Shown: in pieces, positions 1 to 8,381 of the stretch
How the letters are laid out: the number at the start of each line of letters is the position of its first letter
Numbering within the stretch: the first letter of the stretch is position 1
Source: Salpingoeca rosetta
Taxonomy: Eukaryota > Protista > Choanoflagellata
NCBI GenBank assembly: GCA_033442325.1
Contig: JAWQFM010000019.1
Span: 333,703 to 342,083, forward strand
DNA: 8,381 bases
Direction of reading: 5' to 3'
Notes under the pieces: model-generated
Seen by the model: the letters and a program-made list of their open reading frames with translations, nothing else
What the model was told of the DNA's origin: nothing
Databases searched by the model: none
Program-made: the position numbers and the translations under genes

Positions 1-93
<93 letters not shown>
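1..93. repeat. (AC)n microsatellite, intronic in the ARMH3-like gene
   Basis: Near-perfect AC dinucleotide run with one interruption at ~56. Confidence 0.95.
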
Positions 94-99
<6 letters not shown>

Positions 100-232
100 C
101 CCATCGGCAAACACGTTCGTGCATGCGTGTGCAATTTTTCCTTCCCCTGTCTTTCCACCCCTGCATCCTCACCACCTTTTCAATCCCTTCCCTCCCTGTT
201 CGTCATCCCGCCCACAATTCCTTTCCCGACAG

Positions 233-849
233 GAGATGCGCCATCGCCCCGCCACGACAGTGACCGCCATGCGTGCTCCACTCGTCCTCGGCATATTCGG
301 TGATGATGATGTTGGGATTTGCCTGCAGGCATGAACGCAAACGGCTTTTGAGTAGCCCTGATGTTCTGTCGCTGGCAGCTCACTGAAACTCACGCATGCA
401 CATGCACGCGCGTGCACACACATGTACAGATCTGTGCATCGAGTACATGGTCAGCCACATGTCGCGAAGCTTTGACGTCGACGCATACACGTGAGCTGGT
501 GGCGAGCATGAATCGTTCAACGGAAAGGGGGCTGTCCGAGTCTCAATCAAGCCTGTTCACGCTCAAAACCTCCTCTGCTAATTCAAGCACACTCTGCTAC
601 AACATATACTTTCACTTACCCTCACACTCACACCCTCACACTCACACCCTTCGATGCGGGTCCCCTCCCCTCTCCTTCCTTTCACAACACACGCCCCCCC
701 GGTCCAATTGTGTGCGCCCGCGTGCCAGCCGGTGCCTGGAGGTGGTGCACCGGCTGCTGTGCTACCAGAAGACGCATCTCGTCCGCCTCAACTACGAGTG
801 GGCAAACCTCTGGTCCGCACTCTCGGCGCTCTTCAAGTTTGTCATCCAG
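233..849 (+). CDS. ARMH3: ARMH3/C10orf76-like (DUF1741, armadillo-like helical protein), partial; internal exons 233-299, 430-490, 729-849
   Basis: All three exons have cag acceptors and GT donors (gtgatg, gtgagc, gtaagc), and the two introns between them (phase 1, then phase 2) join in frame. Spliced peptide [83 protein letters not shown]. This matches, from memory, the C10orf76 motifs PMRHR...PLV..vlDL.vEf...HM...F..dlY.RC...vH.LLCYQK...vRL.Y.W.eLWsAL..l.KF. The 5' exons lie upstream of the window and the 3' exons are not seen. Confidence 0.85.
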
Positions 850-855
850 GTAAGC

Positions 856-870
856 GTGTGTGTATGTGAA

Positions 871-966
<96 letters not shown>

Positions 967-973
967 TGAGTGA

Positions 974-1014
<41 letters not shown>
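856..1014. repeat. Long (GT)n microsatellite with a (GAGT)n insert
   Basis: ~160 nt of GT repeat directly after the donor at 850. Confidence 0.95.
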
Positions 1015-1016
<2 letters not shown>

Positions 1017-1116
1017 CAATTTCGTGCATGGTTGGCCACCTTGTCACCTTGTATCATAACACATGTTCTCAAGAAGACCACACTATCAACGCCAACAACA
1101 TGTCTGATTCGCGAAG

Positions 1117-4156
<3,040 letters not shown>

Positions 4157-4448: not shown

Positions 4449-7400
4449 ATGAGCGCACCAAAGCCGGTGCAGAAGAAGGCGTCCCAACGCAGCCGTCGCA
4501 AGAAGGTGTTCATTTCGCTGCGGTTCGGAGAGGCTGGCCATGCAGGCAAGCTGCTCAAGCGCGAGTTGGAGCAGGTGCACGGCCTGGACGTGTTCCTGTG
4601 TGATGTTGAGCCTGGTGGCAACATGGGAAAGGAAATCATCACGAACCTTGCGGCCTGTGACTTGGCTGTCATCATGGGCACCAAGACGTACGGCAAGGAG
4701 ACGCCATCCACCTTCAGCACGTTTCAAGAACTTGATTTCATCAAAAATGAGCGCAAGCCATTCTTCTTCATCAAGATGTGCGAGCGGCTTGAAGAGTCGT
4801 TTGCGCGATTCCACCTCCCCGATTCCATCTCCTACTTTCCATGGATACCTGCTTCACGCGATCCCGAGTCCATGTCCCTGCCGCCTGACCTCGCCCCCGC
4901 CATCGTAGACAAGCTCAGCCACATCAGCACCTCTAGCGGCGCGAAGGGCGGCAAAGGCGGCCCCTCCGTCATCACACGGCAGCTCCCAACCACGCTGGAC
5001 GCTGGCCTGACACAGTGGCTGCAGCGTTACAACATGTTGTCCTCCATGGGGCTGGTGCTTGAGAAACTCCACATCACAAGTCTTCACAAATTGGAGCAGG
5101 CAACAGAGGCCATGCGGAATCCGAGAAAGCGTGCACTTGCTAAGCGGCAGCAGCAGAAGCAGGGAAAGAAGGGAGGAGGGCAGGGAAGCGAACCCAAGCC
5201 AACAAAGACCGTGCGACAGTTGTATGAGGGAATACTGATGAGGGAGAAGCAGCTGCAGCCAGCAGAGATTGCCAAGTTCCGGCGAGCGTGCAAGGCGAAG
5301 ACGTGGCGCAACAAAGAGATGGGCAGTGAGCGACATGGAACGTTGGAAGGCACAGAAGAGGTGCACGAACAGGGAGATGAGAAGCAGGAAGAGGGACGTG
5401 AGGGGAGCCAAGAAGAACAGGAGGAGACACAGTCGCACCAGCATCAAGCGAGCGTTGAGTGCCCGCCTGTGCGAAAGGGTGTGGGAGACGAAACCCTGTT
5501 TCGGGAGTGCCTGCAGAGGGTGAGTGGTAAGAACGCAAGAAACAAGATCCTCAGCATTTGGAACAACACGTGTGGCTCGAAAGTTAAGTGAGTATGGACG
5601 TGTTACAAGGATATGCACCTGCAATTCATGAGTAGGGTCCTGGCGGTTTAATGTATCTGGCGTAAATAGAAGTGTGTGCACGATGCTTTGATGGATTGCC
5701 TGATGCGATGTGGCATTCACTCACATCAACACTTTGCACACACACACACATGCATGCATGTATGCGAATGAACACACATACGCACACATGATAACCACAA
5801 CACATGCACCATGCAGCCTTGCAGACAACGATCTTGGACCTGAAGGGGGAAAGGCGATTGGGGAGGCACTGAAGGTGAACACGACGCTGACATCGCTCGA
5901 GTGAGTTGTGCTGTTGTGGCTGTGGCCCTGGGTGTGCATATGTGCGGATTCGTGTGCACGTGCACGTGTGTTTGTGTGGGTGGCAGTGGGCACATTGTTG
6001 TGTTGATGTGGTGTTGATGTGTCTGGGTGAGACAGTGATGTGGTGTGTTGACAAGCGTGAGACGATACGACACACCTGTTTTGTTTTATGTGTGCGTGTG
6101 TGTATGTGAGTGTATGTGAGTGCATGTGGTCTAATTGATTTGCACTTGTGGTTCAGTGGCATGGTGATCGTGATAGTGAAAGGGGATGTGGGTGTGTGGA
6201 TGTAAGTTTTGACCTAAATAGGGGTTGGTTGATTTTCCCTGCCAAGATGTTTTCCCCTTTTGGGGGGGGGGGGGGTTGTGTGTTGTGGAGTAACATAACG
6301 TAATTTGTGGATGTGACATGGTGGTAGTTGTGTGTTTTGTGCAGGTGTGTTTTGGATAGGGATGTGGTGCACGATGCTTTGATGGATTGCCTGATGCGAT
6401 GTGGCATTCACTCACATCAACGCTTTGCACACACACACACACATGCACACACATGCATGCATGTATGCGAATGCACACACATACACACACATGATAACCA
6501 CAACACATGCACCATGCAGCCTTCGGAACAACGATCTTGGACCTGAAGGGGGAAAGGCGATTGGGGAGGCACTGAAGGTGAACACGACGCTGACATCGCT
6601 GGAGTGAGTTGTGTTGCTGTGGCCGTGGCCCTGGGTGTGCATATGTGCGGATTCGTGTGCACGTGCACGTGTGTTTGTGTGGGTGGCAGTGGGCACATTG
6701 TTGTGTTGATGTGGTGTTGATGTGTCTGGGTGAGACAGTGATGTGGTGTGTTGACAAGCGTGAGACGATACGACACACCTGTTTTGTTTTATGTGTGCGT
6801 GTGTGTATGTGAGTGTATGTGAGTGTGCATGTGGTGTAATTGATTTGCACTTGTGGTTCAGTGGCATGGTGATCATGATAGTGAAAGGGGATGTGGGTGT
6901 GTGGATGTGAGTGTTGAGCTAGATAGAGGTTGGTTGATGTTGCCTGACAAGATGTTGTCACACTATTGGGGGGGGGGGTTGTGGAGTAACGTAATTTGTG
7001 AATGTGACATGGTGGTAGTTGTGTGTTTTGTGCAGGTGAGTTTTGGACAGGGATGTGGTGCACGATGCTTTGATGGATTGCCTGATGCGATGTGGCATTC
7101 ACTCACATCAACGCTTTGCACACACACATACACACATGCACACACATGCATGCATGTATGCGAATGAACACACATACGCACACATGATAATCACAACACG
7201 TGCACCATGCAGCCTTTACAGCAACAATCTTAGACCTGAAGGGGGAAAGGCGATTGGGGAGGCACTGAAGGTGAACACGACGCTGACATCGCTGGAGTGA
7301 GTTGTGTTGCTGTGGCCGTGGCCCTGGGTGTGCATATGTGCGGATTCGTGTGCACGTGCACGTGTGTTTGTGTGGGTGGCAGTGGGCACATTGTTGTGTT

Positions 7401-7997
7401 GATGTGGTGTTGATGTGTCTGGGTGAGACAGTGATGTGGTGTGTTGACAAGCGTGAGACGATACAACACACCTGTTTTGTTTTTATATATGTGTGTGTGT
7501 ATGTGTGTGTGTGTGTGTGAGTGCATGTGGTCTCATTGATTTGCACTTGTGGTTCAGTGGCATGGTGATCATGATAGTGAAAGGGGGTGTGGGTGTGTGG
7601 ATGTGAGTGTTGAGCTAGATAGAGGTTGGTTGATGTTGGTTGACAAGATGTTGTCACACTATGGGGGTTGTGTGTTGTGGAGTAACATAACGTAATTTGT
7701 GAATGTGACATGGTGGTAGTTGTGTGTTTTGTGCAGGTGAGTTTTGGACAGGGATGTTGTGCACGATGCCTTGATGGATTGTCTGATGCGATGTGACATT
7801 CACTCACATCAACACTTTACACACACACACACACACATGCACACACATGCATGCATGTATGCGAATGAACACACATACACACACATGATAACCACAAAAC
7901 ATGCACCATGCAGCCTTGACGGCAACGATCTTGGACCTGAAGGGGGAAAGGCGATTGGGGAGGCACTGAAGGTGAACACGACGCTGACATCGCTCTC
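4449..7997 (+). CDS. TIR - SAM-like - LRR protein (candidate intracellular immune receptor), 3' partial; exons 4449-5587, 5817-5900, 6520-6603, 7213-7296, 7914-7997
   Basis: ATG at 4449 opens a 1139-nt exon ending in phase 2 at aa|gtgagt (5588). Four 84-nt phase 2-2 exons follow (atgcag|c ... |gtgagt) and splice in frame to ...NNTCGSKVNLADNDLGPEGGKAIGEALKVNTTLTSLDLRNNDLGPEGGKAIGEALKVNTTLTSLDLYSNNLRPEGGKAIGEALKVNTTLTSLDLDGNDLGPEGGKAIGEALKVNTTLTSLS. No stop is reached before the window end. Confidence 0.85.
4506..4916 (+). other. TIR domain (TIR_2-like)
   Basis: betaA KVFISLR, alphaA AGKLLKRELEQ, betaB GLDVFLCD, BB-loop EPGGN, alphaB KEIITNLAAC, betaC DLAVIMGTKTY, alphaC STFQELDF with Glu at 4728-4730, betaD KPFFFIK. 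Confidence 0.8.
4995..5291 (+). other. SAM-like helical segment with a basic low-complexity insertion
   Basis: LTQWLQRYNM.S.MGLVLEKLHITSLHKL ... LQPAEIAKFRRAC resembles the SAM pattern (W-L-x3-L, helix 3-4, terminal helix). It is interrupted by a K/Q/G-rich stretch. Recognised by pattern only. Confidence 0.4.
5817..5900 (+). CDS. LRR exon 1 (RI-like 28-aa repeat; variable codons GCA GAC = A,D)
   Basis: 84 nt, cag/gt bounded, phase 2-2. Confidence 0.9.
6520..6603 (+). CDS. LRR exon 2 (variable codons CGG AAC = R,N)
   Basis: 84 nt, cag/gt bounded, phase 2-2. Confidence 0.9.
7213..7296 (+). CDS. LRR exon 3 (variable codons TAC AGC = Y,S; also D>N and G>R)
   Basis: 84 nt, cag/gt bounded, phase 2-2. 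Confidence 0.9.
7914..7997 (+). CDS. LRR exon 4 (variable codons GAC GGC = D,G; split codon TC- = S)
   Basis: 84 nt, cag/gt bounded, phase 2-2. Confidence 0.9.
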
Positions 7998-8290
7998 GTG
8001 AGTTGTGTTGTTGTGGCCGTGACCCTGAGCGTGCATATGTGCCAATTCGTGTGCACGTGCACGTGTGTTTGTGTGGGTGGCAGTGGGCACATTGCTGTGT
8101 TGATGTGGTGTTGATGTGTCTGGGTGAGACAGTGATGTGGTGTGTTGACAAGCGTGAGACGATACGACACACCTGTTTTGTTTTATGTGTGTGTGTGTGT
8201 GTGTGTGAGTGTATGTGAGTGTGCATGTGCTGTAATTAATTTGCGCTTTTGCTTCAGTGGCTTGGCGATCTTTTTATTCAATGGTTTTCT

Positions 8291-8294
<4 letters not shown>

Positions 8295-8330
<36 letters not shown>
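8295..8330. repeat. Poly-T run, probably low-quality contig end
   Basis: Similarity to the repeat unit decays from ~8230 and is lost after 8270, followed by T/C homopolymers. Confidence 0.6.
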
Positions 8331-8381
8331 CTCTCCCCTCCTACCCGCTGTCGTTCCCCTTTTTTGTTTCCCTTCCCGCTA

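What the first reader, a model, noticed from the sequence alone, without database searches (positions are those of the whole stretch)
5676..8270. One-LRR-per-exon cassette array: ~700-bp intron+exon units that can be added, deleted or skipped in frame
Seen: each LRR is its own 84-nt exon with phase 2 at both ends. The duplicated unit is the entire intron plus exon, and even the introns are nearly identical, so duplication or homogenisation is recent or ongoing. Any exon can be lost, duplicated, swapped or skipped without a frameshift. Known: brown algal (Ectocarpus) ROCO-LRR and NB-ARC-TPR genes use one-repeat-per-exon shuffling, and lamprey VLRs assemble LRR cassettes. Inference: this is an analogous modular receptor-diversification system in a unicellular eukaryote, here coupled to a TIR effector. 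The long identical introns would serve as substrates for unequal crossover or gene conversion.
Basis: partly seen in the sequence, partly recalled or inferred. Interest (0 to 1): 0.88.

Follow-up and report, generated by a model that had tools for sequence, protein, structure and literature searches.

The report
Single-repeat exon array in choanoflagellate receptor gene
A Salpingoeca rosetta gene for a TIR-LRR-GTPase (ROCO) protein encodes each leucine-rich repeat on its own 84-base exon inside near-identical 700-base units that differ almost only at the predicted ligand-facing codons, matching a design known from brown-algal candidate immune receptors.

Summary
Window 5676-8270 holds four tandem ~700-bp units, 94-97% alike. 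Each carries an 84-nt exon (5817-5900, 6520-6603, 7213-7296, 7914-7997) with AG/GT borders and the same intron phase. The window ends at a 1015-N assembly gap. Beyond it lie two more units and a large exon encoding a terminal LRR, a Roc GTPase and a weakly matched COR region. The gene is therefore TIR-LRR-Roc-COR in Salpingoeca rosetta, not TIR-LRR alone.

Three close and three distant paralogs share the plan: a big TIR exon, 84-nt single-LRR exons, then a Roc-COR exon. Annotated models of three paralogs splice exactly this way.

Within the array, eight nucleotides (the x positions of LxLxxN) differ at 57.5% per pair, against 4.7% in introns and 1.6% in the rest of the exon. Internal units cluster by locus, and their variants are mosaic.

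Best reading: germline unequal crossover and gene conversion, plus diversifying selection on ligand-facing residues. I found no evidence for exon skipping or somatic shuffling, because RNA coverage was too thin to test. Copy number is uncertain because of the gap.

The closest known system is the brown-algal LRR-ROCO genes with 72-nt exons. I rate this a new variant of a known kind. Other first-stage notes of this scan flagged the same stretch.

The parts
4449..5587 (+). Exon 1. It encodes an N-terminal TIR-fold domain (about aa 18-160, window ~4500-4930), then a ~210-aa linker ending in the family-conserved ILSIWNNT motif. It ends two bases into a codon at donor AA|GTGAGT.
   Evidence: The ORF and the stop lying on the donor are. 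TIR_2 scores only 14.9 bits for this copy, but 20 of 25 genome paralogs match TIR_2 at E<=0.01. The profile hits Roq1, RUN1 and SARM1 TIR domains. The AF2 model has pLDDT 84.8, and the top Foldseek hits are TIR domains with TM ~0.55. The exon-1/LRR boundary is conserved in the annotated paralogs.
5588..5816 (+). Intron 1 (229 nt). Its last 141 nt (from ~5676) are homologous to the 3' part of the array introns.
5817..5900 (+). LRR exon 1 (84 nt), encoding LADNDLGPEGGKAIGEALKVNTTLTSL plus a split codon (D).
5901..6519 (+). Array intron after LRR exon 1 (619 nt). It is G+T-rich on the sense strand and non-coding.
   Evidence: Indels between units are not multiples of three.
6520..6603 (+). LRR exon 2 (84 nt), encoding LRNNDLG... 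plus a split codon (D).
6604..7212 (+). Array intron after LRR exon 2 (609 nt).
7213..7296 (+). LRR exon 3 (84 nt), encoding LYSNNLR... plus a split codon (D).
7297..7913 (+). Array intron after LRR exon 3 (617 nt).
7914..7997 (+). LRR exon 4 (84 nt), encoding LDGNDLG... plus a split codon (S).
7998..8270 (+). The 5' part of the intron after LRR exon 4, still homologous to the other units.
8271..8381 (+). A unique T36 and CT-rich stretch that abuts a 1015-N assembly gap. Its status is uncertain: it may be an insertion or junk at a contig end.
   Evidence: The gap is shown. The stretch is unique in the genome. DNA contig runs X1 and X9 show no depth over it.
5821..5826 (+). Hypervariable codons 2-3 of the LRR exon (the xx of LxxN). 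The same offsets apply in the other exons: 6524-6529, 7217-7222 and 7918-7923. The last two bases of each exon (5899-5900, 6602-6603, 7295-7296, 7996-7997) form the second hypervariable patch.
   Evidence: Pairwise difference is 0.575 here, against 0.016 for the rest of the exon and 0.047 for introns. Fisher tests on counts of variable columns give p=2e-7 against the rest of the exon and p=1.4e-4 against introns. Entropy peaks at positions 2, 3, 5, 26 and 28 over 17 exons of four paralogs.

Best explanation
The stretch is the LRR-coding part of a Salpingoeca rosetta gene whose full plan is TIR - linker - RI-like LRRs - Roc GTPase - COR, that is, a TIR-LRR-ROCO protein.

Each 28-residue LRR sits on its own 84-nt exon, and all flanking introns share one phase. 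This exon design is old in the family, because distant paralogs with unrelated introns have it too.

At this locus, and separately at the C17 paralog, whole intron+exon units of ~700 bp have recently been multiplied and kept alike by unequal crossover and gene conversion in the germline. Selection keeps the predicted concave-face residues different from repeat to repeat. These are the x positions of LxxLxLxxNxL.

The likely product is a cytoplasmic sensor. In this reading the LRR surface binds a variable ligand, Roc-COR acts as the switch and the TIR domain is the output.

Shown: the anatomy, the paralog family, clustering of units by locus, mosaic variants and hypervariability confined to surface codons. 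Inferred: the recombination mechanism, selection as the cause of the hypervariability, and any sensing or immune role.
For: - Exact 84-nt exons with canonical splice signals and one shared phase.
- Frame continuity from exon 1 into the array and from the array into the Roc exon.
- Roc PF08477 scores 33.9 bits against a cut-off of 27. COR-A gives weak hits at the expected place in this gene and in two paralogs.
- TIR-like and Roc matches are collinear on the same strand at seven loci.
- NCBI models PTSG_12838, PTSG_08667 and PTSG_06523 splice their LRRs as 27 full codons plus split codons, one per exon.
- Unit identity is 94-97% within this array, 94-98% within the C17 core and 67-72% between loci. 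The tree puts internal units in locus-specific clades with support 98/100 and 100/98.
- Four-fold-site difference between the paralogs' Roc exons is 14-21%, against 4.7% between array introns.
- Variants are mosaic. The upstream parts of u1 and u6 differ at 1 of 139 sites although they sit at opposite ends of the array. Sites 98 and 282 show all four combinations.
- Hypervariable patch 0.575, introns 0.047, rest of exon 0.016. The closest unit pair, u4/u5 (3.5% in introns), differs at 5 of the 8 patch bases.
- Brown-algal precedent for the same logic (PMC3341825, PMC11378527).
Against: - No spliced read of this gene was seen. RNA runs gave 13 and 39 reads, and RNA-like contig sets hold none of exon 1's words.
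- The array contains an assembly gap, and two of the three close paralog arrays (C17, C2) also contain or abut N runs, so unit number and order are unverified.
- COR matches stay under Pfam's cut-off.
- The TIR match of this copy alone is weak (14.9 bits).
- Selection is inferred from site patterns in six short exons, not from a codon model.
- No ligand, phenotype or induction is known.
Confidence: 0.8

Rival explanations
1. The array is an active isoform generator. Because all exons share length and phase, the cell skips or combines LRR exons to make many receptor variants from one gene, as reported for some Ectocarpus ROCO genes.
For: Frame compatibility of every exon subset. Near-identical splice sites and introns, which could promote skipping. 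Alternative splicing of LRR exons reported in brown algae (PMC11378527).
Against: No joint between non-adjacent exons was seen, although coverage was far too low to judge. The annotated paralog models give single isoforms. Skipping is not needed to explain any observation here.
Confidence: 0.12
2. Somatic or clonal DNA rearrangement, as in lamprey VLR assembly, or frequent mitotic unequal crossover, makes cells of one culture differ in unit number and order.
For: Two observations hint at mosaic units that are not in the assembly. A DNA contig in run X9 joins u2-type sequence to u1-type sequence at the same unit offset ('goes back 702'). Four RNA reads continue from u4 into u3-like intron sequence.
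Against: Both observations are equally explained by one or more units hidden in the 1015-N gap. The gene is complete and spliceable in the germline, unlike an incomplete VLR gene with flanking cassettes. No cassette bank outside genes was found, since all exon hits lie inside paralogous genes.
Confidence: 0.03
3. Assembly artefact: the tandem units are stacked reads of paralogs or a mis-expanded repeat, and the real locus is much simpler.
For: The N gap lies inside the array. The pre-gap 111 nt are unsupported in two DNA runs. N runs also lie in or beside two of the three close paralog arrays.
Against: Each unit has its own hypervariable codons and private intron variants. Later DNA runs from other studies (the same organism label, probably the same cultured strain) give contigs with zero mismatches on unit-specific pieces (table 8). 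Paralog units are only 67-72% alike, so they cannot be the source. The gap-free paralog C19:106k and the distant paralogs show the same exon plan.
Confidence: 0.03
4. This is an ordinary signalling ROCO protein whose LRR binds a fixed endogenous partner. The repeat-to-repeat differences simply define one conserved binding surface, and the array's youth is neutral repeat turnover without any role in recognising variable ligands.
For: Human and Dictyostelium ROCO proteins act in cell signalling rather than recognition (PMC6337361, title and abstract only). Expression is very low and no induction data exist.
Against: Three close paralogs differ at the same surface positions while the rest of the repeat stays nearly constant. 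LRR number differs between paralogs. Fusion to a TIR domain is typical of immune or cell-death signalling. A different S. rosetta TIR was shown to make cADPR (bioRxiv 10.64898/2026.04.20.719644).
Confidence: 0.15

Closest known systems
Brown-algal (Ectocarpus, Saccharina) LRR-ROCO candidate immune receptors (Zambounis et al. 2012, PMC3341825; Teng et al. 2024, PMC11378527)
   Same: LRRs lie N-terminal to Roc-COR. Each LRR is on its own short exon, all of one length and one phase. The genes form a multigene family with variable repeat number, and excess variation maps to concave-face positions.
   Different: Exons here are 84 nt and encode 28-residue ribonuclease-inhibitor-like repeats (LRR_6), not 72-nt, 24-residue repeats. 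A TIR domain and a ~210-aa linker precede the LRRs. The host is a choanoflagellate (Holozoa), not a stramenopile. Whole introns are duplicated with the exons and are still 94-97% alike. No inter-locus shuffling, orphan intronic LRRs or alternative splicing were seen here.
Ribonuclease inhibitor and vertebrate NLR LRR exons (from my own knowledge, not checked here)
   Same: The LRR class is RI-like with a 28-29-residue period, and the LRR exons are modular and share one phase.
   Different: In RNH1 and NLRP genes, as I recall, one exon carries a pair of repeats (about 171 nt). Here one exon carries one repeat. The switch domain is Roc-COR rather than NACHT.
Plant TIR-NB-LRR receptors
   Same: A TIR domain is joined to an NTPase switch and an LRR sensor. 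Diversifying selection acts on solvent-exposed LRR residues, and tandem duplication and unequal crossover drive variation.
   Different: The domain order is TIR-LRR-GTPase rather than TIR-NB-ARC-LRR. The switch is a Ras-like GTPase, not a STAND ATPase. The modularity is exon-level, at one repeat per exon.
Lamprey and hagfish variable lymphocyte receptors
   Same: LRR modules are the unit of diversity, and variability concentrates on the concave face.
   Different: VLR genes are incomplete in the germline and are completed somatically from flanking cassettes. Here the gene is complete, the modules are ordinary exons, and no somatic process is shown.

Membership tests
ROCO proteins | Roc (Ras of complex) GTPase domain | tested here: met
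   PF08477 scores 33.9 bits against a cut-off of 27 on L031:6288-8069. The P-loop GHYGIGKTT and the DFAGQ motif are readable in the sequence.
ROCO proteins | COR domain directly after Roc | tested here: inconclusive
   COR-A scores 17.9-22.6 bits (cut-off 35.3) at the expected place in this gene and in paralogs P0002 and P0003. COR-B scores 19.1 bits (cut-off 27) in P0003. UniRef names two paralogs as COR domain-containing.
Brown-algal type LRR-ROCO exon-shuffling receptors | Each LRR on its own exon, all of equal length and the same phase | tested here: met
   Six exons of 84 nt in this array. The same holds in three close and three distant paralogs. The length is 84 nt rather than 72 nt.
Brown-algal type LRR-ROCO exon-shuffling receptors | Excess variation at concave-face LRR positions | tested here: met
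   Hypervariable patch 0.575, introns 0.047, rest of exon 0.016. Entropy peaks at positions 2, 3, 5, 26 and 28. No codon-model test was run.
Brown-algal type LRR-ROCO exon-shuffling receptors | Exon exchange between loci and orphan LRR exons in introns | tested here: not met
   Internal units cluster by locus. All 15 exon hits in the genome lie within the four close paralog genes.
Brown-algal type LRR-ROCO exon-shuffling receptors | Alternative splicing of LRR exons | tested here: inconclusive
   Only 13 and 39 RNA reads were laid, with no joints between exons.
Brown-algal type LRR-ROCO exon-shuffling receptors | Same LRR class (24-residue repeat), implying common descent of the array | tested here: not met
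   Repeats here have 28 residues. The paralog matches LRR_6, the RI-like class, at 48.7 bits. The brown-algal exons encode 24 residues (PMC3341825).
TIR domain | Sequence match to a TIR profile | tested here: inconclusive
   This copy scores TIR_2 14.9 bits against a cut-off of 28. Twenty of 25 genome paralogs match at E<=0.01, the best at 2.9e-7. The family profile hits Roq1 at 8e-4 and RUN1 and SARM1 at 0.02-0.03.
TIR domain | Flavodoxin-like TIR fold | tested here: met
   The AF2 model built with 25 sequences has pLDDT 84.8. The top Foldseek hits are TIR domains (RPPT, SARM1, IL-18Rbeta, RPP1, MyD88, AbTir) with TM 0.5-0.58, mixed with the related nucleoside 2-deoxyribosyltransferases.
TIR domain | Catalytic glutamate of NAD-cleaving TIRs | not tested
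   A Glu is conserved in most paralogs in the motif F-x-E-L after the third strand (E94 here). I did not align it residue by residue to a solved catalytic TIR.
VLR-like somatic cassette assembly | Incomplete germline gene completed from non-genic cassettes | tested here: not met
   The gene is complete and in frame in the germline assembly. No cassettes were found outside genes.

The most novel reading that the evidence does not exclude
S. rosetta, a close unicellular relative of animals, may use these TIR-LRR-ROCO arrays as a truly dynamic recognition repertoire. Unit number and order would vary between cells or lineages of one culture through frequent unequal recombination between the ~600-nt identical introns. 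Exon skipping would add isoforms, perhaps controlled by the antisense-oriented RNA hinted at over the array. That would be an anticipatory-like receptor diversity system outside animals, built on a GTPase switch and a TIR output.
Probability: 0.1. Interest if true: 0.88.

Novelty: new variant of a known kind. Interest (0 to 1): 0.62.

Why it matters
Choanoflagellates are the closest living relatives of animals, and little is known about how they recognise microbes. I found no paper in the searchable library that describes this gene family. It combines a TIR output, a Roc-COR switch and an LRR sensor whose repeats are exon-sized modules, with variation concentrated on the predicted ligand-facing residues. 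That is the signature usually taken to mark fast-evolving receptors in plants, jawless vertebrates and brown algae.

If these genes are sensors, the 'one repeat per exon plus surface hypervariability' solution has arisen independently in two distant eukaryotic lineages on a ROCO scaffold. A GTPase would then stand where NLRs use a STAND ATPase. S. rosetta is a laboratory organism, so knock-out and TIR enzyme assays should allow a direct test.

Tried and rejected
- RNA evidence for splicing: read laying on L031:1050-6950 with two raw RNA runs gave 13 and 39 reads and no exon-exon joints. A second run search with exon 1 alone found no RNA holder.
- Antisense coding rival: the minus strand of the units has long ORFs of up to 323 aa. 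They are His/Thr/Cys-rich low-complexity products of a C+A-rich strand, and the indels between units (2, 5, 9 and 14 nt) do not keep any frame. Rejected as coding.
- Structured RNA in the introns: the Rfam scan at E<=0.1 gave only far-sub-threshold hits. Rejected.
- Transposon or satellite rival: whole-unit hits exist only at this locus. The many short hits elsewhere cover only the CA/GT-rich parts. Rejected.
- Single-sequence AF2 of the TIR region gave pLDDT 51 and was discarded. It was redone with an alignment of 25 paralogs.
- The search for homologous proteins with exon 1 did not return this gene's own annotated model, probably because of the length filter. I ran no further search on it.
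- LRR_6 family search of the genome: it was too sparse to say how common single-LRR exons are in other RI-like LRR genes. Some matches lie in long open frames, so the design is not universal in this genome.
- Paper search for 84-bp single-LRR exons in NLR genes found nothing.
Full report
**1. What is in the sequence**

The window is G000:C19:333703-342083 of a 55.4-Mb genome. Protein look-ups identify it as Salpingoeca rosetta ATCC 50818.

Repeat finding and alignment confirm four head-to-tail units of about 700 bp. They start near 5676, 6373, 7066 and 7767, with spacing of 703, 693 and 701 nt.

Each unit holds an exon of exactly 84 nt: 5817-5900, 6520-6603, 7213-7296 and 7914-7997. The acceptor is ccatgcag| and the donor is |gtgagt. 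One base completes the preceding codon and two bases open the next.

The exons encode L-x-x-N-D-L-G-P-E-G-G-K-A-I-G-E-A-L-K-V-N-T-T-L-T-S-L. This is a 28-residue ribonuclease-inhibitor-like LRR.

Exon 1 (4449-5587) ends two bases into a codon at AA|GTGAGT. All introns around the LRR exons therefore share one phase, and any subset of exons is in frame.

**2.

The window stops at a 1015-N assembly gap.

After the gap come two more units, with exons at L031:5306-5389 and 5986-6069. A large exon follows from L031:6287. It encodes a terminal LRR and a Roc GTPase with GHYGIGKTT and DFAGQ motifs. Two further exons run to a stop at about L031:8583.

Pfam finds Roc above its cut-off and COR-A below it. 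In paralogs, COR-A and COR-B recur below cut-off at the expected place.

The gene is thus TIR - linker - at least six LRRs plus a terminal LRR - Roc - COR.

**3. The N-terminal domain**

This copy alone matches TIR_2 only weakly, at 14.9 bits. I collected 25 paralogous domains from the genome.

- Twenty of them match TIR_2 at E<=0.01.
- Their profile hits the TIR domains of Roq1, RUN1 and SARM1.
- An AlphaFold model built with this alignment has pLDDT 84.8.
- Its best Foldseek matches are TIR domains at TM about 0.55, mixed with the related nucleoside 2-deoxyribosyltransferases.

A TIR fold is supported. The catalytic glutamate was not checked residue by residue.

A 2026 preprint showed that a different S. 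rosetta TIR protein (F2UB80) makes cADPR. TIR enzymology therefore exists in this organism, but that result does not concern this family.

**4. A gene family with the same plan**

TIR-like and Roc matches are collinear on one strand at seven loci:
- this locus;
- C19:106233-110123;
- C2:396832-402345 (minus strand);
- C17:478324-489856;
- more distantly, C1:485289-491515, C29:21537-26765 (minus strand) and C26:763093-766933 (minus strand).

All carry 84-nt single-LRR exons in the same phase.

The NCBI models PTSG_12838, PTSG_08667 and PTSG_06523 are spliced in just this way. They have 27 full codons plus split codons per LRR, after a large TIR exon ending in I(L/F)SIWNN and before a large Roc exon.

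Gene models of the public annotation thus support both the exon plan and the single-gene reading. The plan is old, because the distant paralogs have short, unrelated introns.

**5. What is special at this locus**

Units within this array are 94-97% alike over exon plus 260 nt of flank. The C17 core units are 94-98% alike. Between loci the units are only 67-72% alike.

A maximum-likelihood tree puts internal units in locus-specific clades with support 98/100 and 100/98. Only the last units of the two arrays join, through their orthologous final intron.

Four-fold degenerate sites of the paralogs' Roc exons differ by 14-21%, against 4.7% between array introns. Homogeneity inside an array is therefore several times younger than the gene duplications.

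Variants are mosaic:
- u4 and u5, which flank the gap, share derived sites.
- The intron tails before u2, u3 and u6 group against those before u4 and u5.
- The upstream parts of u1 and u6, at opposite ends of the array, differ at 1 of 139 sites.
- Sites 98 and 282 show all four combinations.

The mechanism itself remains an inference.

**6. Hypervariability**

Ten exon columns vary among the six exons. Seven of them fall in eight nucleotides: codons 2 and 3, and the split last codon.

| Region | Mean pairwise difference |
|---|---|
| Hypervariable 8 nt | 0.575 |
| Rest of the exon | 0.016 |
| Introns | 0.047 |

Fisher tests on counts of variable columns give p=2e-7 against the rest of the exon and p=1.4e-4 against introns. 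The closest unit pair, u4/u5, differs by 3.5% in introns but at 5 of the 8 patch bases.

Over 17 LRR exons of the four close paralogs, amino-acid entropy peaks at positions 2, 3 and 5 (2.3-3.3 bits) and at positions 26 and 28. In the motif LxxLxLxxNxL these are the x positions. From established LRR structures, those side chains point out of the concave beta-sheet.

The rest of the exon is more conserved than the introns. The simplest reading is purifying selection on the scaffold, homogenisation of the whole unit, and selection for difference at the ligand-facing residues. I did not run a codon model.

**7. What is not shown**

Two raw RNA runs gave only 13 and 39 reads on 5.9 kb and no exon-exon joints. 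RNA-like contig sets hold none of exon 1's words. The gene is at most weakly expressed in the available data, and neither its splicing nor exon skipping could be tested.

Nothing indicates somatic rearrangement. Two hints of mosaic units absent from the assembly are most simply explained by one or more units hidden in the gap:
- an X9 contig joins u2-type sequence to u1-type sequence at the same offset;
- four reads run from u4 into u3-like intron sequence.

The 111 nt before the gap (T36 plus CT-rich sequence) are unique in the genome and uncovered in two DNA runs. Their status is open.

Antisense ORFs are compositional. No known RNA family matches. The unit is not a dispersed repeat.

**8. 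Comparison and verdict**

The closest known system is the brown-algal LRR-ROCO family. It has 72-nt single-LRR exons of one phase, exon shuffling, positive selection on the concave face and alternative splicing (PMC3341825, PMC11378527).

The present family shares the logic and the Roc-COR scaffold. It differs in several ways:
- the LRR class (28-residue RI-like repeats on 84-nt exons);
- an added N-terminal TIR domain;
- the lineage (Holozoa);
- the still near-identical introns;
- the lack, so far, of inter-locus shuffling or splicing evidence.

My searches of the paper library for the gene names and for this architecture in choanoflagellates found no description.

I rate it a new variant of a known kind. 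It is real and of clear interest for the evolution of recognition receptors near the animal root.

Noticed in passing
window 1-4156 (+): The upstream neighbour is a multi-exon Gfo/Idh/MocA-type oxidoreductase gene. The exon at 2051-2257 matches PF01408 at 3.6e-12. Its introns are full of (GT)n tracts on the sense strand, and a 466-N assembly gap lies at 3086-3551.
   Followed up: partly
L031:1444-3807 and 5187-5777 (window ~5741-8104 and beyond): In stranded RNA run X13 the few reads over the array lie in the opposite direction to the reads on the end of exon 1 and on the Roc exon. This could be antisense transcription across the array, or noise from 39 reads.
   Followed up: no
window 5586-5593: A TGA stop lies directly on the exon-1 donor (AAG TGA GTA). 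Retention of intron 1 would therefore give a 380-aa TIR-plus-linker protein with no LRR or GTPase.
   Followed up: no
window 8271-8381: A T36 run and CT-rich sequence, unique in the genome, abut the 1015-N gap and have no depth in two DNA contig runs. They may be an insertion in the fourth array intron or contig-end junk.
   Followed up: partly
G000 genome-wide (one search list): The same divergent TIR-like domain occurs at over 30 loci in the genome. Many sit in open frames of quite different lengths (about 210 to 2367 aa). A metagenomic relative (P0151) joins it to WD40 repeats. The TIR module appears to be combined with several kinds of repeat sensors.
   Followed up: no
C17:480732-485905 (L032+L033 8732-13905), and both ends of the fetched C2 piece L034 (C2:394000-395840 and ~403900-403999): Two of the three close paralog loci contain or abut N runs in the assembly, 5.2 kb of N inside the C17 array. 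The family's true LRR numbers are therefore underestimated genome-wide.
   Followed up: no
window 4959-5588: The ~210-aa linker between TIR and LRRs has no Pfam match. It is conserved in the paralogs, including the motifs L(T/Q)QWL and I(L/F)SIWNN just before the first LRR exon. Another first-stage note calls it SAM-like, which I did not test.
   Followed up: no
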